64,000 nucleotides of DNA, taken from contig OZ251233.1 in the NCBI GenBank assembly GCA_965240325.2, positions 1,922,001 through 1,986,000 on the forward strand, in the 5' to 3' direction. The DNA is from Rebecca billardiae RCC1528. Its lineage: Eukaryota > Protista > Haptophyta. Below the pieces are notes generated by a model, which ran no database searches, was not told the origin of the DNA, and was given only the letters and a program-made list of their open reading frames with translations. This document shows, piece by piece, positions 3,420 through 30,888 of this stretch (positions are counted from its first letter, which is position 1; every line of letters begins with the position of its first letter). The position numbers and the translations under genes are program-made.

Positions 3420-6400
3420 TCAGGTGTCCAAAGAACCTCGGCGGAGCTGCTGGATACCGCTTCGCGGGGAGGCACGCGCTGTGCCCGAGCCGCGGGTGAA
3501 TCGGCCGGGGCCGCCTCCGCCCTGCGGCGGCCGGGACGGGCCGGCGCCGCCCTCCTCCTCGTCTGCGCCCAGCAGCGAGTCGGCCGCGTCTTCCGCCGGC
3601 TGCTGCGGCTGCCGCCCAAAGCGCTCGATGATGCCCGGCGCCTTCTTGGGCCGGCGCACGTTGGGCGGCATCGCCCTGCCCTCGGGCAGCGGCGGCGGCG
3701 CGGGCCCCTGCCCGCCGCGCGGCGTGCCCGCGCCTGACCTGCCCTCCTCCAGCTCCACGCCGCGCGGCGTCACCACGTTGGCCGAGTACACATTGGCAGA
3801 ATACATCGTGCCGTCGTCGTACGCCGGCTCCGGTCGCGGCGGCGGCAGTCGGGGCACATTGGGCCCGCGGTAGGTGCCCGCGTCGCGTGCGGATTCGAGG
3901 CCGTCGAACGAGCGCGCCGAGTCCGGGCCGCCGCGCGTCGTCTCGAGCCCGTCGAACGAGCGCGCCGTGTCCGGCCCGCCGCGCGTCGTCTCGAGCCCGT
4001 CGAACGAGCGCGCGGTGTCGGAGCCCCCGGAGCCCGCGCTGCCGCCGGGGGCGCCGGCGACATCGTCGGCAAAGCGCGGCTGCCTGCTCGCGCGCGACTT
4101 GCGCGCGCCGCGGCCGGCGATCTCCGCGGTCTCCTGCCCGCCGAAGCACACGCCGCGCCGCGTGGGCAGGTCGCTCGGCTCGGCGATGTTGCCGCCCACG
4201 TCGCACAGCTCGCTGTCCCCGAACGTGAGGCCTGGCCTGGGCTGCGGCTGCGCTGAGAAGCGCGAAGTTCGGAGGCAGCTCTTGGACGGCTCGGCGGTCG
4301 CGCCGCCGCCCTTGCCCCAGAGCGAGGGGATGGGCAGCTGCACCGCCCCGTCGTCCCCGTCCTCCTCCTCCTCCTCCTCCGACTCGTCCTCCTCGTCCTC
4401 CTCCTCCGAGCTCTCCTCCTCCTCCTCCTTGTCGATCAGCTGGTCCTCGTCGTCCTCGTCGTCGTCGTCGAATGTTTCCTCCTCCGCGTTGATGCACCAC
4501 GCGCGGAGGCACAGCACGCCGATCACGCAGATGCAGATGCACACGGCGATGAGCAGGCCGATGACCGCGCCCGACTCGTAGAACTCCTTGAGCACCAGGT
4601 CGATCAGCGAGGGCGGCGTCTCCAGCTCCACCGCAGACGCCTCGCCGCCCTCGGGCGACGGCGGGTCCGAGGGAGGCAGCGGCGGCGCCGGCGGCGAGGG
4701 CGGCGGGCGCGGCGAGGCGACGACCAAAACTCTCTCGATGTTGAACGCGTAGTTCATCTTGTACGTCAGGCCGAAGGGCCCGAGCTCGCGCACCGCGTCG
4801 ATCTTCTGGCTGATGCTCGACGCGGTCACGTAGTCCGGGACGAACACTCGCACGAGCAGGACCACGGAGCCCGCGCTCCGCTCGAGCACGAACACATACT
4901 TGGTGTCGAGCTCGAGCGCCTCCGAGAGCTTCCGCCGGAAGAACATTTCGTCAAAGGTCTCGAGGTCGCCGGCGACGGTGAGCTGGATGTCGCTGTACGC
5001 GCCCGGCGGGGAGGGCGGCGGCGGGGAGGGCGGCGGGAGCGGCGGCGGCGGCGCGGGCGGCGGCGAGGGCGGCGGCAGCGGCGGCGGCGGCGAGGGCGGC
5101 GGGCTGGGCGGCGGCGAGGGCGGCGGCGGCGGCGGCGACGGGCTGGGCGGAGGCGGCGGCGGCGAGGGCGGCGGGCTCGGTGGCGGGCTGGGCGGTGGGC
5201 TGGGCGGCGGGCTGGGCGGCGGGCTCGGCGGCGGGGAGGGCGGCGGGCTCGGCGGCGGGGAGGGCGGCGGGCTCGGCGGTGGGCTGGGCGGCGGCGAGGG
5301 CGGCGGGCTGGGCGGCGGCGAGGGTGGCGGGCTGGGCGGCGGCGTCGGCGGCGGGCTGGGCGGCGGGCTGGGCGGCGGCGAGGGCGGCGGGCTCGGTGGC
5401 GGCGAGGGCGGCGGGCTCGGCGGCGGGCTCGGCGGCGGGCTCGGCGGCGGGTTTGGCGGCGGGCTCGGCGGCGGGCTCGGCGGCGGGCTCGGCGGCGGGT
5501 TGGGCGGCGGCGAAGGCGGCGGGCTGGGTGGCGGGCTGGGCGGAGGCGAGGGCGGTGGCGGCGAGGGCGGCGGGCTGGGCGGCGGGCTCGGCGGCGGGCT
5601 CGGTGGCGGTGGGGAGGGGGGCGGGCTGGGCGGCGGGCTGGGCGGCGGGCTGGGCGGCGGGCTGGGCGGCGGGCTCGGCGGCGGCGGGCTCGGCGGCGGG
5701 CTCGGCGGCGGCGGGCTCGGCGGCGGCGACGGCGGCGGGCTCGGCGGCGGCGGCGGGCTGGGCGGGCTCGGCGGAGGCGAGAGGAAGCGATAGTACGGGG
5801 CAGAGGCCCACGCGCCTTCGCCGCCCGCGCTGATCGCGCGGATCGAGACGGTGTAGTTCACGCCCGGCAGCGCGCCGCTGCACACCGCGCCGTCGAACGG
5901 CGGCGTCGAGCCCAGGTAGTCCGGGCAGTGCAGCGAGCCGTGAGGCCACACCTTGAACTCATACTTGCTGATTGCGGCGTTGCCCAGGATCTCAAAGGCG
6001 TCGGCCGAGCGGGCGGGCGCGTCCCAGAGCACGCGCATGCCGCGGTCGGGCTTGGGCGCGATGTTGTCCTCCACCGCGACGATCGTCGGCGCCCCCCACG
6101 CCGTGAGCACCGGCGCCTCGGGCGAGGGGAAAGATGCGTTCTTCTCGTAGCACTCGGGCGTGTCGCCTGTCGGATCCCCGACCCAGCCGGTGGCGCCGCC
6201 GGAGCACTGCACGGCGCCGATGCCCCAGAGGCCGTCGTCGTCGTCGCAGAGGATCTTGCAGTTCGTGCCCGGCGCCGAGACGATCGAGCACGTCGAGCCC
6301 GCCACGCCGTGCACCTGCAGCCCGCCCAGCCCGCTGTTGGTGCTGATCGGCGCGTCGGGGCGCGCGCACGGGCGCGTGGCCGTGCACTGGAAGTTGCCGC

Positions 6401-7486
6401 GCCACACGCCGTCGTGGCAGATCAGCTCGGACGAGGGGTACAGGCCTGTCTCGCAGCTCACCAGGCAGAACGTCCCGCTGAACGACCCCGCGCACGCCTG
6501 CAGCTCCGACGCCACCGCGCCCGACACCACCGGCGCCTCGAGGCACTCGCTGCCGCCGTCGGGCACGCTGAGTGGGAACAGCGACGCGTTGACGACACCC
6601 CCGTCGGAGACGCCCATGTTGCAGGGCATCAGCGCGGGGGCGGGGTCCTTGAGGCCGAAGCCCACGGTGCACGGCGTGTTGACTGCCGGCAGGCACGCCG
6701 CGGCGGGCGCGGCGGGGCGGGCGCGCGTGAGCCGGGGCGCCGCGGTCGCGCCATGCCGCGCTGCGGCCGCGGCGCGCGCGCCGCGCGGTCGCATCGCCCC
6801 GCGCCGCGCGCCGCGCGCGCACAGTGACACGAGTCCGTCGCGGGGCGCAGGCGGTTCGTGGCGCCGGTGAGCCAGACGCGGTAGGCGCCGGCCTGCACGC
6901 CGATCGTCGTCGCGTAGTACCACGTCTTGATCGGCACCTCGTACCCGCCGACGTCCTCGTTGAACGCGCAGTTCTGGGCGCTCTTCGCGCCCGTGATCGG
7001 CTTCACCCAGTGGCCCAGCCCGTCGGTGATGGGCACCTGGCGTGAGGTGCCGGTCCACGGGCGGTAGCACGAGATGGTGTGCTCGGAGCTCACGATGTAC
7101 CCCAGGTCGTCGTGGCCCGGCACCAGCTTGGTCGAGCACGCCTGCGACGCTTCACCCCACGGCTTGGCGGACACGAGCGAGTCGCGATACTGGTTGCGGT
7201 TCCACGGGGTGGGCATCTCGCCGCCGTCGCACGAGCCGTTGATCGGCACGGTGATGTCCACGTGATGCGGTGGGCTGATCACCACGCTCACCCCCGTGTC
7301 CTCCACCGGCAGGAAGTACGAGCCAAAGAACCACGTGACGATCGATGGGAAGTCCACATGCGTCGCCGTGCACACCGCGACGACGTGGCCGTACTCCGCG
7401 CGCGCGCCGCCCGTCGCGCACGCAGCGACGAGCAGCGCGCGCAGCAGCGCGCTCGGCCGCATCGAGCGTCCGTGCACCCACGCCAT
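3420..7486 (-). CDS. Single-pass cell-surface glycoprotein: signal peptide, Cys-rich head, 2 sushi-like modules, FN3, SPPP stalk, SEA-like domain, TM, acidic/repeat tail; join(6823..7486, 3420..6682), ~1308 aa
   Basis: Two ORFs (6629..7663 and 3420..7139) join in frame through a 140-nt GTGCGC..GCAG intron (6683-6822). Signal-like LLRALLVAACATGGARA. FN3-like RVLWDAP...PGVNYTVSIRAISAGGEG. SEA-type AGSVVLLV (4860-4871). TM AVIGLLIAVCICICVIGVLCL. Confidence 0.8.
5005..5778 (-). repeat. Coding (Ser-Pro3/4)n extensin-like repeat of the single-pass surface protein
   Basis: Continuous GGC/GGG-rich repeats on the + strand encoding SPPP/SPPPP on the - strand. Confidence 0.95.
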
Positions 7487-8049
7487 GGCCCACACGCGCC
7501 GCCCGAAAGCCGCGACTGGCTGGGCAGGCGGCGGCTGCGGCCCAGGTTTATCTAGTGGACAGCTGGGAGAACCTGCCTGCTGGCGCAGCAGCGGCAAGTC
7601 CTGCGCCGGCTGCTTGCCGAGCGAGCGCGGGCGAGTGGCCGTGAGCCGCCCTCGTTGCTCCAATAATGATTGGGCGCCAATTTTCGGCTGTTTCGCCTAT
7701 TCGGTTTCGCCCGGCTGTCCGGACCAATCTCGAAGGCCCTGATGCCGTGAATGCATGGCCGCGTGATTGACGTGGCCGAGTGGCTTATCCCAATCCTGTG
7801 ATGCGATAATCAACGCGGGCGCGCTGAATGCCATCGATGCGATGCAAAAGCTAAATGGCGATCTAACCACCTTCGCCAATCTTGTTGGCGATGATTGTAT
7901 GCCCTTTACCCACCCAACCCAAAAATACGCCCCGCTTGGCAACCGTGCGTCCGGCGTCCGCCGCGTTGCTGCGGTTTATCTCGAGCCCGAGCTCGTCACG
8001 CATCATCGCCCAGCTAGTTTTTCGTGCCCTGTTGGTAGCCCGGGCCCCA
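7487..8049. promoter_or_regulatory. Probable bidirectional promoter between the two paralogous surface-protein genes
   Basis: 563-bp, comparatively AT-rich interval between divergent ATGs (7486 and 8050), with several CCAAT/ATTGG words (e.g. CCAATAATGATTGG near 7660-7673). Confidence 0.5.
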
Positions 8050-9161
8050 ATGGCGCGCCTGCGGCCCTCGGATGGCACGCGCCGACCGGCGCTCGCGCGG
8101 CCGCTCGCGCTGCTCGCGCTTGCGCTGCCGCTTGTGCGGGCGCACTTGTCGTCCTTCTGCTCGGCGACCAGCCCCGACGCGCCGGGCGTCGTCACGTGGT
8201 TCCTTGGGACATACCACGGTCACCCCGACTACACGCCGGGGCGGATGCACGTCGTCCCGCCCGACGGCCAGCCGTTTGACTTCAACTTTGACAACTGGTG
8301 CGACGCGGGGTACACGGACCTGATCGAGGACTACGATGCGTACGTCCGCTCGCTCCTGTACGCCGCGCCGTACGGGTCGTCCTCCCTCGCGTGCTCGACC
8401 AAGACGGTGCCGGGCAACGCGCAGCTCGGCGAGATCGTGTCCGAGAACCACTTCATCACGTGCTACACGGAGTGGGACGACGGCACGGCGCCGGCCGACG
8501 GCGGTCTGGGCACGTGGGTGCGCCCAACCGACACCGCCCCGGGCGTCTCGCAGAACTGCGGCTTCTCCCGCTTCAAGATCACGTGGGGGTATTACTCCAA
8601 CTGGTACAACCAGCCGGTTGACATGGTCACGTGGTACTACAACTCGTTCGTCGGCTTCAAGGCGGGCGTGTACCAGATCTGGACGGAGGACTACGACGAC
8701 AAGCTCCGCTCGGCCGACGAGTACTGCTCCACCTGCACCCAGTCCGAGCCGATGACGAGCGACCCGCTCAAGTACCCGTGCCGCATGGGCTACGAGGTGA
8801 GCCAGGGAGACACGGCGCCCAAGCCGATCCTGATTGGCGCGAGCGTGGCCGACGGCGGCGCGGAGTGCACGAGCGCGCCGTCGGTGCCCAACGTGCAGCC
8901 CAGCTCGATCGCCGACTGCGTCAACGTCTTCTCAGGCTTCTTCTGCCCGGCGAGCTGCCTGAGCGGCTACCAGCAGGTCGGCGAGCTCAAGTGCGAGGAC
9001 GGCGTCTGGAGCCCTGACTTTGCCTGCACGACTGACGCGCTGTGCACGCGGCCCGTGCCCTCGGACGCGTCGTGCCCGTCGTTCGACTTCTTCCTCTGCA
9101 CGCAGGAGGCGGCCGAAGCCCGCCTCAGCGGCGGCGGCGGCGGCGGCGGCGACGATGACGA

Positions 9162-9203
<42 letters not shown>

Positions 9204-10549
9204 CGGCGACCGGCGGCGGCGCCGGCTGAGCGCCGCCGGCGCGCGCGGCAAGAACAGCACGGCCTCCGGCGCTGTGCCAAGCCGCCGCCGCCTCGCCCCG
9301 GGGGACAAGGACGCCGGCACGGGCGGGGGCAAGACACAGGTCGAGGAGTACTGCCCGCGGTGCAAGTACGGCGGCCTGTGCGACGGCTGCTGCTCCCGGC
9401 GCAACGCGGACAACTCCGACACCGGCTGCTACCCCTGGAGGTTCAACGAGTGCATGCGGCGCAAGCGCGCGCGCGACGACTACATCTGGTGCGGCAACTA
9501 CGAGCCGCCCACGCCCGAGGACGAGGTGGACGAGGGCCTCACGTGCGAGCAGGCCAAGACGGAGAACTACGGGTACATCTACCTCACGCCGTGGCAGGGC
9601 ACGCTCGACCTCGTCGTCGATCTGTCGTTCTCGGCCGTGACCGCGTTCGATTGGGTGAACGCCGATCTCGAGGAGGAGATCGACGGCGTGTACTACATCA
9701 CGACGCGGGCCGGCGAGTACGAGTTCGTGCGCTTCACCGCGTCGGCCGAGCCCGTGCAGCCGCGCGTGTACTGCGCCGACATGATCACCCCGCGCCTCGT
9801 CGGCGTCACACAGAACGACGAGGGCGAGATGTGCACGATGATCAACCGCGAGGGCAAGGTGTGCGGCGTGGCGTGCTCGGCCGAGGAGGGCGAGTGGGGC
9901 TCGGGCGAGGTGGTGTGCGGGCCGGACGGCGTGTGGCGCGTGCGCCCGACCAACCCGGCCACCTGCCACAAGCTGGAGGAGGACCACAAGCCCAACCCGC
10001 CCGTGCTCGACCTGATCACAGCCAACCCGGAGGGGTCGGGCACGCGCGTGTTCTGGACGGCGCCGACGACCGACGGGACGGCGCGCTCGGCCGTCTCGCA
10101 GTACACGTTCGAGATCGGCCCGGCGAACGGGCTGGTGTGCCCGCTGTTCATCGGCGCGCAGCCGCCCGCCGCCGGCCTCGTCTGCTCCGGCTCGCAGCCC
10201 GGCGTCACGTACACCGTGTGCGTGCGCGCGCACAACGCCAAGGGAGTGTCCGCCTGCTCCAACACGCTCACGTACACGCGCTCGCACTCGCCGCCGCCGC
10301 CGAGCCCGAGCCCGCCGCCGCGGCCGTTCTCGCCGCCGCCGAGCCCGGCGCCGCCGCCGAGCCCGCCGCCGCCGCCGCCAAGCCCGCGCCCGCCGCCGCC
10401 GCCGCCGAGCCCCAGCCCGCCGCCGCCGCCGAGCCCGTCGCCGCCGCCGCCGAGCCCGCGGCCGCCGCCGCCGCCCAGCCCGCCGCCGCCGAGCCTGCCG
10501 CCGCGCCCGCCGCCACCGCCGCCGCCCAGCCCGCCGCCACCGCCACCGC

Positions 10550-10599
<50 letters not shown>

Positions 10600-10605
10600 C
10601 CGCCG

Positions 10606-10638
<33 letters not shown>

Positions 10639-10644
10639 CCGCCG

Positions 10645-10687
<43 letters not shown>

Positions 10688-10989
10688 CGCCCCGCCCGCC
10701 GCCGCCGCCGCCGCCGAGCCCGCCGCCGCCGCGCCCGCCGCCGCCGAGCCCGCAGCCGCCGCCGCCGCCGAGCCCGCCGCCGCCGCCGCCGCCGAGCCCG
10801 CCGCCGCCGAGCCCGCCGCCCTCGCCCCCGCCGCCGACCGGCTGCGGCGACCCGCTCGCGGACAACTACGACTCGAACGTTGTGGTGAACGTGCCGACCG
10901 CGTGCCAGTACCACGGCTGCACTGACCCGGCTGCGTTCAACTACGACTCGACGGCGACGGAGGGCGGCGGCGTGCTCTGCCACTACTCG

Positions 10990-11026
<37 letters not shown>

Positions 11027-11187
11027 CGCCGCCGCCGAGCCCGCCGCCGCCGAACCCGCCGCCGCCGCCGCCGCCCAGCCCGCCGCCGCCGCCGCCGCCG
11101 AGCCCGCCGCCGCCGCCGCCGCCGAGCCCGCCGCCGCCGCCGCCGCCGAGCCCACCGCCGCCGCCGCCGCCGAGCCCGCCGCCGCCG

Positions 11188-11220
<33 letters not shown>

Positions 11221-11265
11221 CCGCCGAGCCCGCCGCCGCCGCCGCCGCCGAGCCCGCCGCCGCCC

Positions 11266-11298
<33 letters not shown>

Positions 11299-12804
11299 CC
11301 GCCGAGCCCGCCACCGCCGAGCTCGCCGCCGCCGTCACCAACGCCGCCGCCGCCGAGCGCGCCGCCGCTGCCACCGCCCAGCCCGCCGCCACGGCCGCCG
11401 CCAAGCCCGCCGCCGCCGAGCCCGCCGCCCTCGCCGCCGCCGTTGCCGCCGCCTCCGCCGCCGCCGAGCCCGCCGCCGAGCCCGCCTCCGGCCCCGCCGC
11501 CCTCGCCGCCGCCGCCGCCTGCGCCGCCGCCCAGCCCGCCGCCGTCGCCGCCGCCGCCCTCACCACCGCCCTCGCCGCCGCCGCTCATCCCCGCGTCGGT
11601 GCGCATGACCCGGCCGTTCTACTTCCGCGGCGAGGACCAGCACTCGATCTACTGGATCGAGCCGCGCGTGGTGAACGAGAAGAACTGGATCGGCATCTTC
11701 CGCCCCGAGGACGCCCGCCGCTTCCGCCGGCTGAGCGAGGTTGAGGCGGAGCTCCATGATGGCCGCCGGCTGGAGGGCGTCGAGGACATTCTGATCGGCG
11801 AGGGGTCGGGCAAGGAGCCGCTGGCGTGGCACTACGCGGTGAACCAGACGGGGGACGTGGACTTCGGGCACAACGTGAGCGACATCTCGGACTACGTCGT
11901 GTGCCTCTTCTGGAACGACACGGAGGCGGTGATGGCGCAGACGGTGATGAACGTGGTCGACCGACCGCTGCCGCCGCCGAGCCCGCCGTCGCCGCCGCCC
12001 AGCCCGCCGCCCAGCCCGCCGCCGCCGACCCCGCCGCCGAGCCCGCCGCCGTCGCCGCCGCCGTCGCCGCCGCCGTCGCCGCCGCCGTCGCCACCGCCCA
12101 GCCCACCGCCGAGCCCGCCGCCCGCCCTGCCGCCCGCGCCGCCGCCGAGCCCGCCGCCGTCGCCGCCGCCGAGCCCGCCGCCCCCCAGCCCGCCGCCGTC
12201 ACCGCCGCCAACCCCGCCGCCGTCACCGCCGCCGAGCCCGCCGCCGTCACCGCCGCCAGCCCCGCCGCCGTCACCGCCGCCGAGCCCGCCGCCAGCCCCG
12301 CCGCCAGCCCCGCCGCCCAGCCCGCCGCCCAGCCCACCGCCAACGCCGCCGCCGTCGCCACCACCCAGCCCGCCGCCTTCGCCACCGCCATCGCCGCCGC
12401 CATCGCCGCCGCCATCGCCACCGCCGAGCCCGCCGCCGAGCCCGCCACCGGACCAGCCGCCCGCGGCACCGCCGACGCCTCCGCCGTCGCCGCCGCCGAG
12501 CCCGCCGCCGAGCCCGCCGCCACCGCCGCCGCCGAGCCCGCCGCCGAGCCCGCCGCCGAGCCCGCCGCCGCCAAGCCCACCGCCGGCGCCGCCACCGACG
12601 CCGCCGCCGAGCCCGCCGCCGCACCCGCCGCCGAGCCCGCCGCCGCCCACCGGCTGCGGCGACCCCAAGGCTGACAACTACGACTCGAACGTGGTGGTGA
12701 ACGTGGTCGCCGAGTGCCACTACTTCGGCTGCACCGACCCCGGCGCGTTCAACTACGATTCGACGGCCACGAGCGGCGAGGTGTCGCTGTGCGAGTACTC
12801 GCCC

Positions 12805-12838
<34 letters not shown>

Positions 12839-21800: not shown

Positions 21801-24800
21801 GCCGTCGCCCCCGCCGTCGCCGCCGCCGAGCCCGCCGCCGAGCCCGCCGCCGAGCCCGCCGCCGTCGCCGCCGCCGTCGCCACCGCCATTCCCGCCACCC
21901 TCGCCTCCACCGAGCCCACCGCCAAGCCCGCCGCCGATCCCACCGCCGAGCCCTCCGCCGAGCCCGCCGCCGAGCCCGCCGCCGCCGAGCCCGCCGCCCT
22001 CGCCGCCGCCCTCGCCGCCGCCCTCGCCGCCGCCAAGCCCGCCGCCGCCCAGCCCGCCGCCCAGCCCGCCGCCCAGCCCGCCGCCATCGCCTCCGCCGTT
22101 CCCGCCACCGAGCCCGCCGCCCTCGCCTCCACCCAGCCCGCCGCCGTTCCCTCCACCCAGCCCGCCGCCCAGCCCGCCGCCCAGCCCGCCGCCCAGCCCG
22201 CCGCCGCCCTCGCCGCCGCCAAGCCCGCCGCCCTCGCCGCCGCCCTCGCCACCGCCCAGCCCACCGCCGCCCAGCCCACCGCCCAGCCCACCGCCGAGCC
22301 CACCGCCATCGCCTCCGCCAAGCCCGCCGCCGAGCCCGCCGCCCTCGCCTCCGCCCAGCCCGCCGCCGTTCCCTCCACCCAGCCCGCCGCCCAGCCCGCC
22401 GCCCAGCCCGCCGCCGTCGCCGCCGCCGCTTATCCCAGCGACCCTCGCCACGTCGCAGCCGTACTACTTTGTGGGCGAGGACCAGCTGGTGGACTACTGG
22501 GTGGAGCCGCGCACGGTGCACACGGAGAACTGGGTGGGCATCTTCGCGCCCGACCGGCGGCGGCGCGAGCTGCTGCAGATCGACCAGATCATCCTGCACA
22601 CGCACTCGGGCGACCCGCCGCTCGCGTGGGCGTGGGCGAGCGCGCAGCAGGGCCGGATCAACATGGGGCACAACGTGTCCGAGCTGCAGGACTACGACGT
22701 GCTGCTCCTGTGGAACAGCAGCTACAAGGTGATGGCGCAGGCGGTGCTGCGTGTGGTCGACCGGCCGTCGCCGCCGCCGAGCCCGCCGAGCCCGCCGCCG
22801 AGCCCGCCGCCGAGCCCGCCGCCGAGCCCGCCGCCGAGCCCGCCGCCATCGCCGCCACCCTCGCCGCCGCCCAGCCCGCCGCCTTTCCCGCCGCCGAGCC
22901 CGCCGCCATCGCCACCGCCGAGCCCGCCGCCCAGCCCACCGCCGCCGAGCCCGCCGCCTTCGCCCCCGCCGAGCCCCCCGCCCAGCCCGCCGCCGAGCCC
23001 GCCGCCACCCAGCCCGCCACCCAGCCCGCCGCCCAGCCCGCCCCCGTTCCCACCGCCATCGCCTCCCCCGTCACCGCCGCCGTCGCCGCCGCCGAGCCCG
23101 CCGCCATCGCCGCCGCCGAGCCCGCCGCCGAGCCCGCCACCATCGCCGCCGCCGAGCCCGCCGCCGAGCCCGCCGCCGAGCCCGCCGCCGAGCCCGCCGC
23201 CGAGCCCGCCGCCGAGCCCGCCGCCGGGCCCGCCGCCGAGCCCGCCGCCCTCACCGCCGCCGAGCCCGCCGCCCTCGCCGCCGCCGAGCCCGCCACCGCC
23301 GAGCCCGCCGCCCTCGCCGCCACCGAGCCCGCCGCCGAGCCCGCCGCCGAGCCCGCCGCCGCCCTCGCCGCCGCCACCGCCCTCTCCATCGCCGCCACCG
23401 CCCTCTCCATCGCCGCCACCGCCGAGCTCGCCCCCCGAGCCGCCACCGAGCCCGCCGCCGACGCCGCCGCCGTCGCCGCCGCCGTCGCCGCCGCCGAGCC
23501 CGCCGCCGAGCCCACCGCCGAGCCCACCGCCATCGCCGCCGCCGAGCCCGCCGCCGAGCCCGCCGCCTCTCCCGCCGCCCTCGCCGCCGCCGAGCCCGCC
23601 GCCGAGCCCTCCGCCCTCGCCACCGCCGCCTCCGCCATCGCCGCCGCCGAGCCCGCCGCCGAGCCCACCGCCGTCGCCGCCGCCGAGCCCGCCGCCGAGC
23701 CCGCCGCCGTCGCCGCCGCCGTCGCCGCCGCCTCTCCCGCCGCCGTCGCCGCCGCCGTCGCCGCCGCCCGGGCCTCCCCCGTCCCCGCCGCCACTCCCGC
23801 CGCCCTCGCCGCCGCCCTCGCCCCCGCCGAGCCCGCCGCCGCTGTGCCTGCCCGGCGAGTACCTCGACGGCCGTTACTGCTCACCCTGTCCGGTCGGTTA
23901 CTGGAAGGACGGGCGCGGCAACGAGGAGTGCTCGCGCTGCGACTCGATCGACCCGTTCCTCACGACGTTCGGCGAGGGCGCGCCCGACGCCGACTCGTGC
24001 GAGTGCGTGCACGCCGGCTACGTCAAGCAGGGCAACGGCACCGACGCGCGCTGCGTGTGCGCCGCCGGGTACGGCGCTGCCAACGTGACGAACACCAGCG
24101 CGCTCGGCTGCGAGCCGTGCGCGATCGGCACGTTCAAGCACTGGGTCGGCACGGACCTGTGCTCCGCGTGCGACGCCATCGACGCGCACCTCACCACCGA
24201 GGGCACGGGCGCGACCAACTCGTCCCTCTGCGTGTGCGACGACGACTCGCTCGTCGAGGTCGGCGACGGCACCGAGCGGCAGTGCCTCTGCCCTCCCGGC
24301 TACGAGTATGACAACACGCTCCGCACGTGCACCGAGTGCCGACTCAACTACTTCCGCAACGGCACGTCGCTCGACGCGTGCCACTGGTGCAAGGAGCTGG
24401 ACAGCTTCCTCGTCACCGCGCGCACCGCCTCCGTCTCGCCCAACGACTGCTTCTGCGAGGAGACCACGCGGCGGCGCGGCGAGACCACCGTGTACACGGT
24501 GGGCGACGGCTGGGGCCGGCGGTGCGAGTGTGCCGAGGCCTACGAGCGCGTCGAGGCGGGCTGCACGCTCAAGCAGGAGGGCACGCTGCCCGAGACGACG
24601 GGGCCCGAGGGCAACGTGATCGACCAGTGCGCCGACATCGACCCGCACCTCACCTCCGCGCCCGGCGGCGCCGCGTCCGTCGACGACTGCATCTGCTGGC
24701 ACGACTCGTTCGTGCTCGCGACGAGCGCCGCCGGCTTCCCGACCTGCCTCTGCCCGGCGGGCACGGGCTATGACGCGGTGAGCCGCACGTGCTGCCCGTG

Positions 24801-27800
24801 CCCCGCGGGGTACTTCAAGTCGACCGTCTCGCGCGACGAGTGCGCGGCGTGCGCGGACACGGACCCGCACCTCACCACGTTCGCCACGGGCGCGATGAGC
24901 ATCGAGCAGTGCGTGTGCTCGCACCTCACGTTCGAGCTGCGCGGCTCGGGCGCCACGGCCTCGTGCGTGTGCCCGGCGGGCACGCGCTACGACGGCGTCA
25001 ACCGTGCGTGCGAGGAGTGCGGCGAGGGCACGTTCAAGCCCGAGCGCGGCAACCACGACTGCCGCTCGTGCTCGGAGCTGCGCGCGCCCAACCTCACCGC
25101 GATGGCGCTCGACGTGCACGCGAGCACGCACTGCACGTGCGACTACTTCGGCTTTGAGGTACGGCACGGCGAGTGCGTCTGCCCGCCAGGCTACCGGTAC
25201 AACTCTGCGGACACGCGCTGCGTCAAGTGCGCGCCCGGCACGTACAAGAACAAGTACGGCAACGGCGGGTGCGACAAGTGCAAGCCGGGGACGTACCGAT
25301 CGTACGCGGGCGCGACCGACTGCGCGGGCTGCGCCGCCGGCTTCTACTCGGACGAGGAGGGCGCGACCTCGTGCCGCACGCGCTGCCCCGCGGGCTCTTT
25401 CTCGTGGGAGCGCGCGACCGAGTGCGTCGAGTGCGGCCTGCTCGGCTCGGGCAACTGCTCGTCCGGCGTCTTCCGCGGCTCGCTGCCCGGGCAGTGGGCG
25501 TGGCCCATCTCGATGGACTGGCTCGACGAGCAGGACGGCAACCGGCTGGCGCAGATCGCCTTCTACGACTGCCCTCAGCCCGAGTACTGCGGGGGCGGGC
25601 TGGGCTCGTCCTGCTGCGGCGGGCGCGACGGGCCGCTCTGCGCCGTGTGCGCGCCGCGCACGTGGCGCACGCTGCTCGGCGACTGTGAGGCGTGCGAGAC
25701 GGTCGAGTACTTCTACCCGCCGCCGCTGCTCGTCGCGACCGCGGCCTTCCTCACCCTCGTGCTGCTCGGCTGGGTCCGGCTGTGCGGCTGGTTCTGCAAC
25801 CGGCGCGCGGACATCGCCGCGCTGCGCCGCGTGACGCGATCGTCCGCGTACGACTCCTCAGGGGCGCCGTGGCGCGCGTCGCGCGCGTCCACGTTCGCGC
25901 GCGGCTCGGGGGACAGCCCCGACGGGCTGACCGAGCGCTCGGGGGCGCTCTCCTCGCGCTTCGGCTTCACGCCGCGCACCGCGCGCACCAACGACTTCAA
26001 CGCCGCGCGCAAGTCGCGCATGTCCATGTCTCCGGGCTACGGCGGCTTCACCGAGCGCGGCGGGATGACGCGCCGCGGCTCGGCGCAGGGCGGCGCCGGC
26101 CCCGACTTTGCGCCGCCCACCTCGCGCGCGAGCACGGCCGCGCGGCTCGGCCTGTACGACGACACGTCGCTCGCCGCGCGCGTGATGCGCTTCATGCGCT
26201 TCACCGCGGACGAGCGCTTCAAGATCACGATCGCGTACCTGCAGATCATCTCGACGCTCGACTACGCGTACACGGTGCCGTGGCCCACGCCCTTCCGCTA
26301 CTTCGTCAACTTCTGGCGCTTCCTGATGCTCGACATGCGCTGGTGGGGCTTCGCGTGCATCTCGCTCGACACCGTGTACGTCCGCTTCGCGGTCAAGGCG
26401 GCGATCTGCCTCGTCGCCTTCTTCGTGACGCTGCGCGGTCTCAAGTGCTGCCGGTGCGAGGGCGCGTCCGTCACGTGGGACCGCTCGCTCTTTAAGGCGC
26501 GCCTCTTCGCAGGCTTCCTCGCGTTCCCCGTGATGGCGTACTCGGTGGTCGAGCTGTACCCGTGCGTCGAGCTCGGCGACGGCGTGAGCTTCCTCGACGC
26601 GGAGATGACGATGCGCTGCGAGTCTGAGGCGTGGAGCGCGTATGCGGCGCTGGGCGCGGGCTTTGGGCTGCTCTACATGGTCGGCGTGCCGCTCTTCTAT
26701 GGCGGCGTGCTGCTGCACGCGCAGCGCTGGCCCGCGCTGCCGTGGGAGTCGGACGAGGAGTTCGTGCGCAACCTGATCTCGCAGGGCGTCAAGTCGGGCG
26801 CGATCAACAACGACAACTTCATGGCGGCGGCCATCTACACGACGCAGCACCGCACGCGCCCGTTCCTCGACCACCTCGGTCGGCTGCTCATCCGCTGCGG
26901 CGGCGAGCGCGCGCAGGTGTACGTCGAGGAGGCGCAGAAGGGCGGCGGCGAGCCGTCGCGCTCGGCGCGGCTGCTGCACAAGAAGAACCTGCGCGCGTTC
27001 GGCCTCATCTTCGGCGCGTTCCGCCCGCACGTCTGGTGGTGGGAGTTTGTGGACATGGCGCGCAAGCTCGTGCTCGTCGCGCTCACGATGGCCGCCTTCC
27101 GCGGCACCATCCTGCAGCTCGTCGTCTCGCTCGTCACGGCGTTTTTGTACGCGCTGCTGCTCGCGAGCGTGCAGCCGTACAAGGACGTGGTCGACTACCG
27201 CGTCGCGCAGTGCGCCAACGTGTGCCTCTGCATCCTGTACACCCTCGCGATCCTCACGGTCGGCTACTCGGAGCGCGTGCAGCTGCGCCGCGACGTGTGC
27301 TTCGGCACGCCGCCGCCCGCGGACGACGCGCAGGCGGCGCTGTGGTTCGCGATCCTGCTGATCCTCATCGGCATCGTGCCGGTGCTCTGGTCGCTCGTGC
27401 CCGCCAAGGCCACGCGCAAGCTCAACCGGCGCACGCGCTCCGCGCTCGTCGCGTACCTCATGCGCCGGCAGCGCCTGCACGCGCCCGACGACGACGACGA
27501 CGACGACGAGGACGCGATGAACCGCCAGTGGGTGCGCGACGTGATCGCGCCCGGCGAGCGCGTCACGCCGCGCAAGAAGCCGGTCGAGCAGCTGGCCGCG
27601 CAGATCGGGCGCACCGCGCGCAGGTCGCGCAGGAGCTCCCGCCGCCGCGGCCAGAGGTCGGACCGCTCTGACCTGAGCTTCCCTGGCGAGGACTTCGGTG
27701 CCGCCGACTCCGCGCGTGCGCAGCAGCGTCGCCGTGGCTCCGGTGGCGACGCCGAATTCCCTGGCGAGGACTTCGGGCCAGCGTCTGGCCGCAGTGCAGG

Positions 27801-30800
27801 CGGTGCCCGCCGTGGCCCGGGCACCGACCGCTCTGACCTGAGCTTCCCTGGCGAGGACTTCGGTGCCGCCGACTCCGCGCGTGCGCAGCAGCGTCGCCGC
27901 GGCTCCGGTGGCGACGCCGACTTCCCCGGCGAGGACTTCGGGCCAGCGTCTGGCCGCAGTGCAGGCGGTGCCCGCCGTGGCCCGGGCACCGACCGCTCTG
28001 ACCTGAGCTTCCCTGGCGAGGACTTCGGTGCCGCCGACTCGGCGCGTGCGCAGCAGCGCCGCCGCGGCTCCGGTGGCGACGCCGACTTCCCCGGCGAGGA
28101 CTTCGGGCCAGCGTCTGGCCGCAGTGCAGGCGGTGCCCGCCGTGGCCCGGGCACCGACCGCTCTGACCTGAGCTTCCCTGGCGAGGACTTCGGTGCCGCC
28201 GACTCGGCGCGTGCGCAGCAGCGTCGCCGCGGTCCTGGTGGCGACGCCGAATTCCCCGGCGAGGACTTCGGGCCGGCGTCTGGCCGCAGCGGTGCCCGCC
28301 GTGGCCAGGCGACGGACCGCTCTGACATGAGCTTCCCTGGCGAGGACTTCGGTGCCGCCGACTCCGCGCGTGCGCAGCAGCGTCGCCGCGGTCCTGGTGG
28401 CGACGCCGAATTCCCTGGCGAGGACTTCGGGCCGGCGTCTGGCCGCAGCGGTGCTCGCCGTGGCCAGGCGACGGACCGCTCTGACATGAGCTTCCCTGGC
28501 GAGGACTTCGGTGCCGCCGACTCCGCGCGTGCGCAGCAGCGTCGCCGCGGTCCTGGTGGCGACGCCGAATTCCCTGGCGAGGACTTCGGGCCGGCGTCTG
28601 GCCGCAGCGGTGCCCGCCGTGGCCAGGCGACGGACCGCTCTGACATGAGCTTCCCTGGCGAGGACTTCGGTGCCGCCGACTCCGCGCGTGCGCAGCCGCG
28701 CCGCCGCGGCTCCGGTGGCGACGCCGAATTCCCCGGCGAGGACTTCGGGCCGGCGTCGGGCCGCAGCTCGTCTGCACCGCGCCGTGGCCAGGCGACGGAC
28801 CGCTCGGATTGGAGCTTCCCTGGCGAGGACTTCGGTGCCGCCGACTCCGCGCGTGCGCAGCAGCGTCGCCGCGGTCCTGGTGGCGACGCCGAATTCCCTG
28901 GCGAGGACTTCGGGCCGGCGTCTGGCCGCAGCGGTGCTCGCCGTGGCCAGGCGACGGACCGCTCTGACATGAGCTTCCCTGGCGAGGACTTCGGTGCCGC
29001 CGACTCCGCGCGTGCGCAGCAGCGTCGCCGCGGTCCTGGTGGCGACGCCGAATTCCCTGGCGAGGACTTCGGGCCGGCGTCTGGCCGCAGCGGTGCCCGC
29101 CGTGGCCAGGCGACGGACCGCTCTGACATGAGCTTCCCTGGCGAGGACTTCGGTGCCGCCGACTCCGCGCGTGCGCAGCCGCGCCGCCGCGGCTCCGGTG
29201 GCGACGCCGAATTCCCCGGCGAGGACTTCGGGCCGGCGTCGGGCCGCAGCTCGTCTGCACCGCGCCGTGGCCAGGCGACGGACCGCTCGGATTGGAGCTT
29301 CCCTGGCGAGGACTTCGGTGCCGCCGACTCCGCGCGTGCGCAGCAGCGTCGCCGCGGTCCTGGTGGCGACGCCGAATTCCCTGGCGAGGACTTCGGGCCG
29401 GCGTCGGGCCGCAGCGCTGCCCGCCGTGGCCAGGCGACGGACCGCTCTGACATGAGCTTCCCTGGCGAGGACTTCGGTGCCGCCGACTCCGCGCGTGCGC
29501 AGCAGCGTCGCCGCGGTTCTGGTGGCGACGCCGAATTCCCTGGCGAGGACTTCGGGCCGGCGTCGGGCCGCAGCGGTGCTCGCCGTGGCCAGGCGACGGA
29601 CCGCTCTGACATGAGCTTCCCTGGCGAGGACTTCGGTGCCGCCGACTCCGCGCGTGCGCAGCAGCGTCGCCGCGGTTCTGGTGGCGACGCCGAATTCCCT
29701 GGCGAGGACTTCGGGCCGGCGTCGGGCCGCAGCTCGTCTGCACCGCGCCGTGGCCAGGCGACGGACCGCTCGGATTGGAGCTTCCCTGGCGAGGACTTCG
29801 GTGCCGCCGACTCGGCGCGCGGCCCAGCGCAGCGGCGCGGCGGCAACACGGCACGCTCCGACGCCAGCGTGCCATTCCCAGGAGACGAAGACATTTTCCG
29901 TGAGACGCCCGCGCCCTCGCGTCCGGAGAGCAACCGCAACTCCCGCCGCGGCCCGGGCACCGACCGCTCGGACCTGAGCTTCCCGGCTGAGGACTTCGGT
30001 GCCGCCGACTCGGCGCGCGGCCCAGCGCAGCGGCGCGGCGGCAACACGGCACGCTCCGACGCCAGCGTGCCATTCCCAGGAGACGAAGACATTTTCCGTG
30101 AGACGCCCGCGCCCTCGCGTCCGGAGAGCAACCGCAACTCCCGCCGCGGCCCGGGCACCGACCGCTCGGACCTGAGCTTCCCGGCTGAGGACTTCGGTGC
30201 CGCCGACTCGGCGCGCGGCCCAGCGCAGCGGCGCGGCGGCAACACGGCACGCTCCGACGCCAGCGTGCCATTCCCAGGAGACGAAGACATTTTCCGTGAG
30301 ACGCCCGCGCCCTCGCGTCCGGAGAGCAACCGCAACTCCCGCCGCGGCCCGGGTACCGACCGCTCGGACCTGAGCTTCCCGGCCGAGGACTTCGGCGCTC
30401 CCGACTCTGCCCGCGCTACAGGTTGGCGACCTTGGCGTCGCCAGCCCAGCTCGGCTCGCCAGCCCAACACGGCGCGCTCGGAGGCGGAGAGTGTCGCGTT
30501 CCCCGCAGACGACGGGATCTTCAGAGACTCGCGCCCCGAGAGCCAGCGTACCGATGGCCGCGGTCGGCGGCCGCCGGGCACGGCTCGCTCCATGGGTGAG
30601 AGCAGCGTCGGCGACGCGTTCGGCGACCCGAGCGCATTCAACTCTCGCCCCGAAAGCCAGCGCGCCAGCACGCGGGGGGGGCGCGCGGCCAACACGGCAC
30701 GTTCTCAGGCGGAGAGCGTCGGCAGCGCGTTCCCCGATGAGGACATGTTTCACGACTCGCGGCCGGAGAGCACGCGCAATACGGGACGCGGCTCGCGCGC

Positions 30801-30888
30801 CCTGACGGGTCGCTCCGAGGCGACCGATGGCGGGGCGTTCGAGGAGGATGCCGAGCAAATGTTCGACGACTCGTCGCTGCGCATTTGA
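8050..30888 (+). CDS. Giant (7612 aa) multi-pass surface receptor-like protein: signal peptide, Cys-rich head, sushi-like, FN3, ~4500-aa SPPP stalk with embedded domains, GCC2_GCC3/ephrin-receptor-like Cys repeats, ~9-TM TRP/FLC-like module, tandem-repeat tail
   Basis: Single uninterrupted ORF. ATG 8050 is followed by hydrophobic LALLALALPLVRA. CxPCPxGx[YF]K repeats 23842-25700. TM module with KITIAYLQIIS...VPWP, WWWEFVDMARKL and VQPY motifs typical of protist Cys-rich multi-pass proteins. Confidence 0.85.
10288..23841 (+). repeat. ~13.5-kb coding (x-Pro-Pro-Pro)n repeat, x mostly Ser, interrupted by 5 globular inserts
   Basis: Directly visible CCG/AGC/TCG repeats. Inserts at 10837-10986, 11584-11965, 12649-12798, 18175-18324 and 22429-22763. 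Confidence 0.97.
27661..30410 (+). repeat. Coding tandem repeat array (13 x 159/165 bp, then 3 x 198 bp) in the cytoplasmic tail of the giant protein
   Basis: GACCGCTC unit starts at 27661, 27826, 27991, 28156, 28315, 28474, 28633, 28798, 28957, 29116, 29281, 29440, 29599, 29764, 29962, 30160 and 30358. Confidence 0.95.

What the first reader, a model, noticed from the sequence alone, without database searches (positions are those of the whole stretch)
3420..30888. Head-to-head paralogous pair of stalked surface proteins with the same head but different membrane anchors
Seen: the two divergent genes (ATGs 563 bp apart) share a collinear ectodomain. Examples are VTWFFGSY/VTWFLGTY, ACSTKLVPG/ACSTKTVPG, GLGHWVKP/GLGTWVRP, TWYY..G..AG.Y..W, DGGSEC/DGGAEC, C.DGVW and the FN3 PGVNYTV/PGVTYTV. 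Each head is followed by an SPPP stalk. One gene has a ~260-aa stalk, a SEA-like domain and one TM; the other has a ~4500-aa stalk, Cys repeats and ~9 TM. Knowledge: globular heads on hydroxyproline-rich shafts are the design of volvocine sexual agglutinins and pherophorins. Inference: a co-regulated two-part adhesion, recognition or mechanosensing system (short sheddable partner plus long channel/receptor-anchored partner).
Basis: partly seen in the sequence, partly recalled or inferred. Interest (0 to 1): 0.85.

Follow-up and report, generated by a model that had tools for sequence, protein, structure and literature searches.

The report
Stalked surface-protein gene pair, alga
A very GC-rich haptophyte alga has two back-to-back genes that put the same kind of protein head on a short (about 0.09 micrometre) and a giant (about 1.3 micrometre) proline rod; the giant one resembles the core protein of Chlamydomonas flagellar hairs, and its tip is a previously unnamed domain that begins with a conserved histidine.

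Summary
Gene A (minus strand, ATG 7486, one inferred 140-nt intron, 1,308 aa) and gene B (plus strand, ATG 8050, one 7,612-aa ORF) start 563 bp apart. Their heads are homologous (37% identity over 310 aa, E 4e-51; 35% over 171 aa, E 2e-20).

Both heads sit on Ser-Pro3 rods. A continues with a domain carrying an SEA-type G-S-V-V motif and one TM helix. B continues with Ephrin_rec_like repeats, 8-9 TM helices weakly matching the TRP/Flc-Pkd2p family, and a repetitive tail.

New here:
- The first ~200 aa of the head belong to an unnamed protist family in which a histidine follows the signal-peptide site in about 30 of 30 non-A-type members. B keeps this histidine and a conserved TYH motif; the A-type genes have lost the TYH histidine.
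- Diacronema lutheri has both orthologues. Its public gene models splice out the in-frame rods.
- In D. lutheri the two genes lie 8.8 kb apart with five genes between, and a third species has no B-like gene within 10 kb. Head-to-head adjacency is therefore not conserved.

The closest known system is Chlamydomonas MST3/Mstax, by architecture only. Co-regulation and function are untested, because no RNA run was listed. This scan has already noted other giant proline-stalk genes in this genome.

The parts
3420..7486 (-). Gene A, 1,308 aa. Exon 1 is 7486-6823, the inferred intron is 6822-6683, and exon 2 is 6682-3420 including the stop.
   Evidence: The intron position and ends match the D. lutheri orthologue model.
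6823..7387 (-). Gene A N-terminal beta-sandwich head domain (A-type). The aligned His is kept but is preceded by E-Y-G, and the TYH histidine is replaced (GSYF).
5781..6680 (-). Rest of the gene A head: two Cys-rich sushi-like modules and an fn3-like domain.
   Evidence: alignment to B. fn3 scores 20.5 bits, below the cut-off of 25.
4971..5813 (-). Gene A Ser-Pro3 stalk, about 281 aa, or about 87 nm if it forms a PPII helix.
4713..5003 (-). Gene A juxtamembrane ~97-aa domain with a conserved AGS[VT]V (SEA-type G/S) motif.
   Evidence: No Pfam or PDB match. An atlas SEA cluster scores 0.82.
4509..4565 (-). Gene A single TM helix. It is followed (3420-4508) by an acidic then repeat-bearing cytosolic tail.
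   Evidence: Hydropathy 3.25. 48-nt x2.6 repeat.
7487..8049 (.). 563-bp divergent intergenic region with a GC dip. It is a possible shared promoter.
   Evidence: No expression data were available.
8050..30888 (+). Gene B, a single ORF of 7,612 aa.
   Evidence: The D. lutheri orthologue is also one uninterrupted ORF of 4,136 aa with the same module order.
8143..8799 (+). Gene B N-terminal domain, starting at the His that follows the signal-peptide site (V-R-A|H), with GTYH about 25 aa later. It belongs to an unnamed protist family.
   Evidence: AF2 model pLDDT 75, pTM 0.77, beta-sandwich. No convincing structural neighbour. No Pfam family.
8800..10287 (+). Rest of the gene B head: sushi-like module, a ~255-aa insert (poly-Asp, Cys-rich, small beta region), a second sushi-like module, and an fn3-like domain.
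10288..23877 (+). Gene B stalk region: 4,262 Pro-rich residues (about 1.3 micrometres as PPII) in six segments. They are interrupted by three ~45-aa four-Cys modules (about 10840-11010, 12650-12800, 18170-18330) and two ~100-aa NW[IV]GIF modules (11602-11949, 22447-22749).
   Evidence: The module order is conserved in D. lutheri.
23878..25700 (+). Gene B Cys-rich Ephrin_rec_like repeats.
   Evidence: PF07699, E 6.6e-30, 7 stretches.
25726..27390 (+). Gene B multi-pass membrane region with 8-9 helices, TRP/Flc-Pkd2p-like.
   Evidence: Hydropathy. PF06011 scores 15-17.7 bits in B, 24.7 in the D. lutheri orthologue and 29.6 in relative P0041, against a cut-off of 28.5. Atlas features score 0.94 to PF06011-bearing clusters.
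27642..30415 (+). Gene B cytosolic tail tandem repeats: 159 nt x13.5 and 198 nt x3.4, at 94-96% identity.
   Evidence: No comparable repeat tract is seen in the D. lutheri orthologue tail (read by eye).

Best explanation
Shown or strongly supported:
- A and B are an inverted-duplicate pair of type-I surface glycoprotein genes in a pavlovophyte haptophyte related to Diacronema lutheri.
- Each encodes a signal peptide and a homologous head. The head consists of a new ~200-aa beta-sandwich domain, two Cys-rich sushi-like modules and an fn3-like domain.
- Each head is followed by a Ser-Pro3 rod of the extensin/hydroxyproline-glycoprotein type.
- The duplication predates the split from D. lutheri. 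After it the anchors diverged.
- A has a ~87-nm rod, a juxtamembrane domain with an SEA-type G-S-V-V motif, one TM helix and an acidic tail.
- B has a ~1.3-micrometre rod with conserved small modules, an Ephrin_rec_like collar, an 8-9-helix TRP/Flc-Pkd2p-like base and a long repetitive cytosolic tail.

Inferred:
- B forms a thin glycosylated surface or flagellar hair with its N-terminal head at the distal tip and a channel-like base. This is the design of Chlamydomonas MST3/Mstax. Pull or ligand capture at the tip would be reported at the membrane.
- The conserved mature N-terminal His and the TYH motif of the B-type head suggest a metal- or ligand-binding site.
- A shows a faster-evolving head that lacks the TYH histidine, close to the membrane and possibly sheddable at the SEA-like site.
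- The 563-bp head-to-head arrangement is specific to this lineage.
For: - Paralogy of the heads: (E 4e-51 and 2e-20).
- Gene models.
- Rods.
- Anchors.
- Orthologues in D. lutheri, with the same module order and a single 4,136-codon ORF.
- Tree: a pavlovophyte clade of five (support 97/94), with B-type orthologues at 100/99.
- Rates: B-type N-terminal regions are 64% identical between the two species, against 36% for the A-type heads.
- His after the signal-peptide site: present in all ~30 non-A-type members. TYH, or TYxH, is also conserved.
- SEA-type motif: AGS[VT]V is kept in three A-type orthologues that are only 29-35% identical in this domain.
- Literature: MST3 is 8,572 aa with a distal N terminus, and a single glycosylated PPII helix can span over 100 nm; it also has a PKD2-like TMD (PMC11015965; bioRxiv 10.1101/2024.12.24.630281). 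The Pkd2p/Flc family is stretch-activated (PMC9727806, PMC6727746).
Against: - There is no expression, protein or localisation evidence.
- Hydroxylation and glycosylation are assumed from the sequence type.
- The PF06011 match of B itself is below the Pfam cut-off.
- There is no PKD_channel match, and BLASTP shows no similarity to the membrane part of the Bigelowiella relative.
- The stalk is plain (SPPP)n without an MST3-type repeat unit. Its 37-aa super-period is absent in D. lutheri, so nothing indicates a decorating partner.
- The head model has no significant structural neighbour, so ligand type is open.
- His1 status rests on a simple -3/-1 rule, not on a trained signal-peptide predictor or N-terminal sequencing.
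- The length of the 13.5-kb repeat depends on the assembly and could not be checked with reads.
Confidence: 0.55

Rival explanations
1. First reader's reading. A and B are a co-regulated two-part system that works together in adhesion, mating-type recognition or mechanosensing, as a short sheddable partner plus a long receptor. They would be driven by one bidirectional promoter and might interact through their heads.
For: - The start codons are 563 bp apart, with a GC dip between them.
- The heads are homologous.
- The SEA-type G-S-V-V motif is conserved in A-type proteins.
- The genes are still linked and divergent in D. lutheri.
Against: - Adjacency is not conserved. Five unrelated genes lie between the D. 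lutheri orthologues.
- No B-type gene lies within 10 kb upstream of the A-type gene on a third species' contig, and the flanks are not syntenic.
- A-type heads evolve much faster and have lost the conserved TYH histidine, which argues for divergent rather than shared binding.
- Expression could not be tested.
Confidence: 0.2
2. Metal-capture or redox head. The B-type N-terminal domain is a histidine-brace-like metal (for example copper) site held far from the cell on the rod. It would serve metal capture for, or gating of, the channel-like base (like bacterial 'anglerases'), or oxidative chemistry on extracellular polymers (LPMO-like).
For: - His directly follows the signal-peptide site in about 30 of 30 non-A-type family members from haptophytes, chlorarachniophytes, diplonemids and metagenomes. 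Conservation begins exactly at that His.
- A conserved Tyr-His lies about 24-25 residues later.
- The fold is a beta-sandwich, as in LPMOs, CopC, YcnI and Ang-1.
- A conserved N-terminal His is a reliable predictor of metal binding, and such domains occur fused to membrane permeases (PMC12537917).
Against: - No sequence match to any known histidine-brace family: Pfam scan of all 34 members and PDB profile search.
- No LPMO, CopC or YcnI among the structural neighbours.
- The geometry of the two histidines was not measured.
- The base is not a known metal permease.
- A micrometre-long rod is an odd way to hand a metal ion to the membrane.
Confidence: 0.2
3. Passive structural coat. Both proteins are simply hydroxyproline-rich components of the cell covering or flagellar fuzz (spacing, hydration, drag, anti-grazing). 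The membrane parts act only as anchors and there is no signalling.
For: - SPPP rods are the hallmark of wall and matrix glycoproteins.
- Many other giant proline-stalk genes with unrelated heads were noted in this genome, so this is a common building plan.
- Rod length differs twofold between species, 4,262 against 2,022 aa, which suggests loose constraint on length.
Against: - A 9-helix TRP/Flc-like module, an Ephrin_rec_like collar and a >1,100-aa cytosolic tail are far more than an anchor needs.
- The B-type N-terminal domain and membrane part are well conserved between species, at 64% and 44-51% identity.
Confidence: 0.2
4. Artefact. The 23-kb ORF is not one gene. Either the GC-rich repeat merely stays open by chance or is an intron or non-coding satellite, or its length is an assembly error.
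For: - In 83-86% GC sequence, other frames and the opposite strand also stay open for 1,000-2,000 codons.
- The public D. lutheri annotation treats the rods as introns.
- No reads were available to check the array.
Against: - The same frame runs through the head, three Cys modules, two beta modules, the Cys repeats and the membrane part.
- D. lutheri keeps the same order in one 4,136-codon frame.
- The 'introns' of the public models are in frame and code SPPP.
- The repeat units are degenerate at the DNA level, 68-72% matches, as expected for an old coding array rather than a collapsed satellite.
Confidence: 0.05

Closest known systems
Chlamydomonas reinhardtii MST3 / Mstax (mastigoneme axial protein) with its partner MST1
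   Same: Both are giant secreted hydroxyproline-type proteins: 8,572 aa for MST3 and 7,612 aa for B. Both have the N terminus at the far end, a rod hundreds of nm to about 1 micrometre long built of Pro-rich PPII, small folded modules near the N terminus, a C-terminal multi-pass TRP-superfamily-like membrane domain and a cytosolic tail. A second, shorter protein with a Ser-Hyp3 helix also exists in that system (PMC11015965; bioRxiv 10.1101/2024.12.24.630281).
   Different: - No sequence relationship was found.
- B's membrane part weakly matches PF06011 (Flc/Pkd2p), not PKD_channel.
- B's rod is plain (SPPP)n without the P13...P11(XXP)3 units that bind MST1.
- B has Ephrin_rec_like repeats and a different head.
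- A is membrane-anchored and is a paralogue of B, whereas no paralogy between MST1 and MST3 is reported in the sources read here (whether MST1 itself has a membrane anchor was not checked).
- Localisation is unknown.
Fungal Pkd2p / Flc family (Pfam TRP, PF06011)
   Same: Signal peptide, large extracellular N-terminal part, about 9 TM helices and a cytosolic tail. S. pombe Pkd2 is activated by membrane stretch (PMC6727746, PMC9727806).
   Different: B's score is below the Pfam cut-off (15-17.7 bits against 28.5). Only a distant relative, P0041, passes (29.6). The extracellular part is completely different and about 5,900 aa long.
Histidine-brace proteins: LPMOs, CopC, YcnI and the bacterial 'anglerase' Ang-1/Ang-2 domains fused to HupE/UreJ permeases
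   Same: A His is predicted to become residue 1 after signal-peptide cleavage and is invariant across the family. The fold is a beta-sandwich. The domain is tethered to a multi-pass membrane protein (PMC12537917).
   Different: No sequence or significant structural match. Metal binding is untested. The tether is a micrometre-long rod. The proteins are eukaryotic.
Volvocine sexual agglutinins, pherophorins and plant extensins
   Same: Globular domains on Ser-(Hyp)n shafts.
   Different: No Pherophorin or extensin-domain match. No Tyr cross-link motifs in the rods. These proteins are integral membrane proteins, not wall-bound or peripherally attached.
SEA-domain mucins (e.g. MUC1)
   Same: In A, a long O-glycosylatable stalk is followed by a ~100-aa juxtamembrane domain with a G-S-V-V type motif, then one TM helix and a cytosolic tail.
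   Different: No Pfam SEA hit or PDB profile hit. The fold was not modelled. Autoproteolysis is untested.

Membership tests
MST3/Mstax-type mastigoneme axial proteins | PKD2-like (PKD_channel) transmembrane domain | tested here: not met
   There is no PKD_channel hit in B or its D. lutheri orthologue. Only PF06011 appears, weakly.
MST3/Mstax-type mastigoneme axial proteins | Repeated P13...P11(XXP)3 units that template MST1 binding | tested here: not met
   The rod is about 80-90% SPPP/SPPPP units. The 37-aa super-period is not conserved in D. lutheri.
MST3/Mstax-type mastigoneme axial proteins | Giant secreted Pro-rich protein with the folded N-terminal part distal and a multi-pass C-terminal anchor | tested here: met
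   Signal peptide, head, 4,262 Pro-rich residues, 8-9 TM helices and a tail in one ORF.
MST3/Mstax-type mastigoneme axial proteins | Location in flagellar hairs | not testable with these tools
   No proteomic or imaging data are available.
Pfam TRP (PF06011; Flc/Pkd2p) | Score above the gathering cut-off (28.5 bits) | tested here: inconclusive
   B scores 15-17.7 bits, the D. lutheri orthologue 24.7 and relative P0041 29.6. Atlas features score 0.94 to clusters carrying PF06011.
Pfam TRP (PF06011; Flc/Pkd2p) | Extracellular N-terminal part with signal peptide, about 9 TM helices, cytosolic C-terminal tail | tested here: met
   Hydropathy gives 8-9 helices. There is a basic loop after TM1 and a basic tail.
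Ephrin_rec_like (PF07699) | Pfam match above cut-off | tested here: met
   103 bits, E 6.6e-30, 7 stretches. The D. lutheri orthologue scores 86 bits.
Extensin / Ser-Hyp glycoproteins | Tandem Ser-Pro3-4 repeats | tested here: met
   In B's two longest stalk segments there are 607 SPPP and 82 SPPPP units. A has 43 SPPP units.
Extensin / Ser-Hyp glycoproteins | Tyr cross-linking motifs | tested here: not met
   No Tyr appears among the non-Ser residues of the rods.
Extensin / Ser-Hyp glycoproteins | Prolyl hydroxylation and arabinosylation | not testable with these tools
   This is a chemical modification and cannot be read from DNA.
SEA domain (PF01390) | Profile match | tested here: not met
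   No Pfam hit at E<=0.1. No PDB profile hit at E<=10. An atlas SEA cluster scores only 0.82.
SEA domain (PF01390) | G|S-V-V-V type autoproteolysis motif in a juxtamembrane ~100-aa domain | tested here: met
   AGS[VT]V is conserved in window A, D. lutheri KFE25_012416 and contig L004. Cleavage itself is untested.
Histidine-brace metalloproteins (LPMO AA families, CopC, YcnI, Ang-1/2) | His as first residue of the mature protein | tested here: inconclusive
   In B and about 30 relatives, His follows a hydrophobic stretch with a small residue at -1, and most also fit the -3 position (27 of the 30 representatives plus B and its D. lutheri orthologue; P0031 and P0032 fail at -3). Conservation starts at that His. 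This is a simple rule only, not a trained predictor or N-terminal sequencing. In A the His is preceded by E-Y-G, and D. lutheri A has Arg.
Histidine-brace metalloproteins (LPMO AA families, CopC, YcnI, Ang-1/2) | Sequence or fold membership in a known family | tested here: not met
   No Pfam family for any of the 34 members. No PDB sequence hit. The best structural Z is 5.1, to generic FN3/Ig/CBM sandwiches.
Histidine-brace metalloproteins (LPMO AA families, CopC, YcnI, Ang-1/2) | Metal coordination by His1 plus a second ligand | not testable with these tools
   Model coordinates are not exposed. Only strand adjacency could be inferred.
Volvocine agglutinins / pherophorins | Homologous globular domains (e.g. 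Pherophorin PF12499) | tested here: not met
   No such Pfam hit.
fn3 (PF00041) | Pfam match above cut-off (25 bits) | tested here: inconclusive
   20.5 bits in A, 19.5 in B and 21.1 in D. lutheri B, at the equivalent position just before the rod.

The most novel reading that the evidence does not exclude
The head's first domain founds a new eukaryotic family of N-terminal-histidine (histidine-brace-like) metal-binding domains. In B it sits at the tip of a ~1.3-micrometre glycosylated rod wired to a TRP/Flc-like channel module. That would be a 'fishing-rod' sensor, or an oxidative tool, reaching far beyond the cell surface. The neighbouring paralogue A would be a version that has lost the metal site.
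Probability: 0.2. Interest if true: 0.85.

Novelty: new variant of a known kind. Interest (0 to 1): 0.62.

Why it matters
The finding shows that the MST3 plan, a micrometre-long hydroxyproline-type rod with its own channel-like base, is not confined to green algae. It also occurs in a haptophyte, here with a different TRP-superfamily module.

The pair is a natural experiment: the same head on an ~87-nm rod and on a ~1.3-micrometre rod, with different anchors.

It defines an unnamed protist-wide domain with an invariant predicted N-terminal histidine. This is a directly testable candidate metal site.

It shows that public D. lutheri gene models (KFE25_012416 and KFE25_012422) cut out in-frame rods. 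Such proteins are therefore systematically under-annotated.

It may also bear on the molecular identity of the fine non-tubular hairs and knob-like surface bodies described for Pavlovales. That link rests on my own background knowledge and was not tested.

Tried and rejected
- Single-sequence AF2 of the B head failed (pLDDT 31).
- The language-model atlas gave nothing for the head.
- Foldseek against the PDB, VIA wide and the atlas shape search gave only generic sandwiches.
- Word-indexed protein searches with the head profile and with the whole head returned almost nothing.
With A6 it found no relatives.
- No RNA run was listed, so read laying could not be used.
- My guess that the NW[IV]GIF module is a SKICH domain was not supported.
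- The membrane part of the Bigelowiella relative shows no BLASTP similarity to B. I therefore claim only similar architecture, not homology of the bases.
- The 37-aa super-period of B's rod was considered as an MST3-like binding register. I rejected this because the D. lutheri rod lacks it.
- I rejected D. lutheri itself as the source organism: the N-terminal region of the B head is only 64% identical.

Full report
**What is in the sequence**

The window is 60-86% GC. The long minus-strand ORF 3420-7139 is in another frame.

Removing 140 nt (6822-6683, GT..AG) joins the two frames into one 1,308-aa product. At the junction this product aligns with gene B. The D. lutheri orthologue model has an intron at the same position with near-identical ends (GTGCGCGC...GCAG|TC). 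The junction remains an inference, because no RNA run was listed.

Gene B starts at 8050 and runs as one ORF to 30888, giving 7,612 aa. The two start codons are 563 bp apart. The gap contains a GC dip to 50-57%.

**The heads are homologous**

BLASTP gives 37% identity over 310 aa (E 4e-51) and 35% over 171 aa (E 2e-20). The matches are collinear. B carries a ~255-aa insert with a poly-Asp run. No third copy exists in the window.

Pfam sees only a sub-threshold fn3 just before each rod and nothing for the first ~220 aa.

**Rods and anchors**

A has 281 Pro-rich residues. B has 4,262 in six segments, overwhelmingly SPPP and SPPPP. At about 0.31 nm per residue for a PPII helix (the value used for MST3 in PMC11015965), this gives about 87 nm for A and about 1.3 micrometres for B.

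B's rod is interrupted by three ~45-aa four-Cys modules and two ~100-aa modules with an NW[IV]GIF motif.

After its rod, A has a ~97-aa domain, one strong TM helix and an acidic, repeat-bearing tail.

After its rod, B has:
- Ephrin_rec_like repeats (E 6.6e-30);
- 8-9 hydrophobic helices;
- a >1,100-aa tail with 53-aa x13.5 and 66-aa x3.4 repeats.

The membrane part matches Pfam TRP (PF06011, the Flc/Pkd2p family) weakly. B scores 15-17.7 bits, its D. lutheri orthologue 24.7 and a distant relative 29.6, against a cut-off of 28.5. Language-model features also point to clusters carrying PF06011.

**The N-terminal domain is an unnamed protist family with a conserved first histidine**

A profile of the two domains found 34 representatives among 1.84 billion proteins, 6 of them at E<=1e-10. 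One of these, P0022, a 1,608-aa repeat protein, looks unrelated.

The named sources are Diacronema lutheri, Bigelowiella natans and the diplonemids Namystynia and Diplonema. The rest come from metagenomes or transcriptomes.

In every non-A-type member with an intact N terminus (about 30), a His directly follows a hydrophobic stretch with a small residue at -1. Most also have a suitable residue at -3 (27 of the 30 representatives). Conservation starts exactly at that His. The pattern is H-x4-C-[ST]-x-T, then G-T-Y-H about 24 residues later, or T-Y-x-H in one clade.

This is what one expects if His is residue 1 of the mature protein. A conserved N-terminal His is the signature used to find LPMO-like and other metal-binding proteins, including 'anglerase' domains fused to membrane permeases (PMC12537917).

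With the 34-sequence alignment, AF2 gives a beta-sandwich (pLDDT 75, pTM 0.77). If strands 2-9 and 16-23 form a hairpin, the Tyr-His would lie next to His1. This is inferred, because coordinates are not exposed.

No known family claims the domain:
- no Pfam hit for any member;
- no PDB sequence hit;
- best structural Z of 5.1, to generic FN3, Ig and carbohydrate-binding sandwiches.

B keeps V-R-A|H and GTYH. All three A-type genes lack the TYH histidine. The D. lutheri A-type gene also has Arg in place of the first His, and window A has E-Y-G before it.

**Relatives and synteny**

D. lutheri (43.5 Mb, 73% GC; PMC8379373) has both types on contig JAGTXO010000011. KFE25_012422 is the B-type gene and KFE25_012416 the A-type gene.

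Identities between the window genes and the D. lutheri orthologues:

| Comparison | Identity |
|---|---|
| B-type, first ~320 aa of head | 64% |
| B-type, membrane region | 51% |
| B-type, whole C-terminal part | 44% |
| A-type, head | 36% |

The window therefore comes from a related but different pavlovophyte.

The public models are too short. The B-type locus is one uninterrupted 4,136-codon ORF with 2,022 Pro-rich residues and the same module order, lacking only the second NW[IV]GIF module. The 2,000-aa public model splices the rods out. The A-type model removes an in-frame 657-nt stretch that codes the end of fn3 and an SPPP rod.

The two D. lutheri genes are divergent but 8.8 kb apart. 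Between them lie five unrelated genes: an isochorismatase, an ABC transporter, a PX-domain protein and two without Pfam hits. None of these is in the window.

A third, 71.5%-GC metagenome contig carries an A-type gene (37% identity over 508 aa) that includes the SEA-like domain. It has no B-type gene within 10 kb upstream and no shared flanks.

A maximum-likelihood tree groups the five pavlovophyte heads (support 97/94). The B-type orthologues join at 100/99 on short branches. The A-type branches are long, and window A is unresolved among them. The duplication is therefore older than these species, while the tight head-to-head arrangement is not conserved.

The Bigelowiella relative (1,851 aa) also has head, a Ser/Thr/Pro-rich stretch, a Cys-rich part and many TM helices. 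Its membrane part shows no BLASTP similarity to B.

**SEA-like domain of A**

Pfam and a PDB profile search find nothing. The atlas gives an SEA cluster at only 0.82.

The motif AGS[VT]V, followed by a hydrophobic strand, is conserved in three orthologues that are otherwise 29-35% identical in this domain. It resembles the G|SVVV autoproteolysis site of SEA mucins; that comparison is from my own knowledge. Shedding is possible but unproven.

**Comparison with known systems**

The closest system is the Chlamydomonas mastigoneme. MST3/Mstax is a protein of 8,572 residues (described as nearly 8,000 in the second source). Its N terminus is at the distal tip, it has long glycosylated poly-Hyp helices, and a PKD2-like membrane domain joins PKD2 and SIP. 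It is wrapped by MST1, which has a Ser-Hyp3 helix (PMC11015965; bioRxiv 10.1101/2024.12.24.630281; PMC7265326).

B shares the plan but fails the membership tests. It has no PKD_channel match, no MST3-type repeat unit, a different head, and a 37-aa super-period that is absent in D. lutheri. I therefore call it 'works like', not 'is a member of'.

The PF06011 family includes S. pombe Pkd2, which is activated by membrane stretch (PMC9727806, PMC6727746). That makes a tension-reporting base plausible but unshown.

**Context within this scan**

Notes from the scan describe many other giant SPPP-stalk genes in this genome, with RCC1, LRR or integrin-like heads and polycystin-1-like bases. One follow-up also pointed to the Chlamydomonas hair core. 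The rod design is thus a recurring plan in this alga.

Particular to this locus are the paralogous pair with swapped anchors, the TRP/Flc-like base and the His-first head family.

**Verdict**

The structural and evolutionary reading is solid, at about 0.85. The functional reading, a hair-like tip sensor with a channel-like base, is inferred at about 0.35-0.4. A metal-binding head is a testable minority reading at about 0.2. The co-regulated two-part system is untested and is weakened by the lack of conserved adjacency.

Noticed in passing
L003:3001-15411 and L001:10001-14276 (D. lutheri JAGTXO010000011): The public gene models KFE25_012422 (2,000 aa) and KFE25_012416 (1,161 aa) treat in-frame SPPP-coding stretches as introns. 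The B-type locus is one 4,136-codon ORF. The A-type model removes an in-frame 657-nt stretch that codes the end of fn3 and an SPPP rod.
   Followed up: yes
window 10840-11010, ~12650-12800, ~18170-18330: Three ~45-aa four-Cys modules, each made of two half-repeats of the type C-x-D-x-x-A-x-N-[YF]-D, punctuate the rod. Three copies sit at the equivalent places in the D. lutheri orthologue. There is no Pfam family (only EsV_1_7_cys at E 0.089).
   Followed up: partly
window 11602-11949 and 22447-22749: Two ~100-aa modules with an NW[IV]GIF motif lie inside the rod, and D. lutheri has one. My recollection of a SKICH-like motif was not supported by Pfam or by a PDB profile search.
   Followed up: partly
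window 27642-30415: The cytosolic tail of B has 53-aa x13.5 and 66-aa x3.4 tandem repeats at 94-96% DNA identity. No comparable repeat tract is visible in the D. lutheri orthologue tail, so this looks like a recent lineage-specific expansion. A's tail has a short 16-aa x2.6 repeat with a similar D-[ST]-A-R-S...F-[DP]-G flavour.
   Followed up: no
window 9055-9820: The ~255-aa insert in B's head includes 21 consecutive Asp residues flanked by Gly and Arg runs, plus a Cys-rich stretch. The D. lutheri orthologue has a shorter, different insert here.
   Followed up: no
window 12769-22467: B's two long rod segments show a 37-aa (111-nt) super-period, with one SPPPP every 37 residues and occasional hydrophobic XPPP. 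The D. lutheri rods lack it. It probably marks the unit of recent amplification.
   Followed up: yes
P0006 (Bigelowiella natans, 1,851 aa): A chlorarachniophyte protein has the same His-first head, a sushi-like module, a Ser/Thr/Pro-rich mucin-like stretch, a Cys-rich part (weak DUF7630 match) and many TM helices. The overall plan is similar in a very distant lineage, but homology of the membrane parts is unproven.
   Followed up: partly
L002 (Logan contig from run ERR14847151): A 2,980-nt public contig is 99.97% identical to window 5735-8715, including the inferred intron and the intergenic region. At least one public run therefore holds DNA of this same organism.
   Followed up: no
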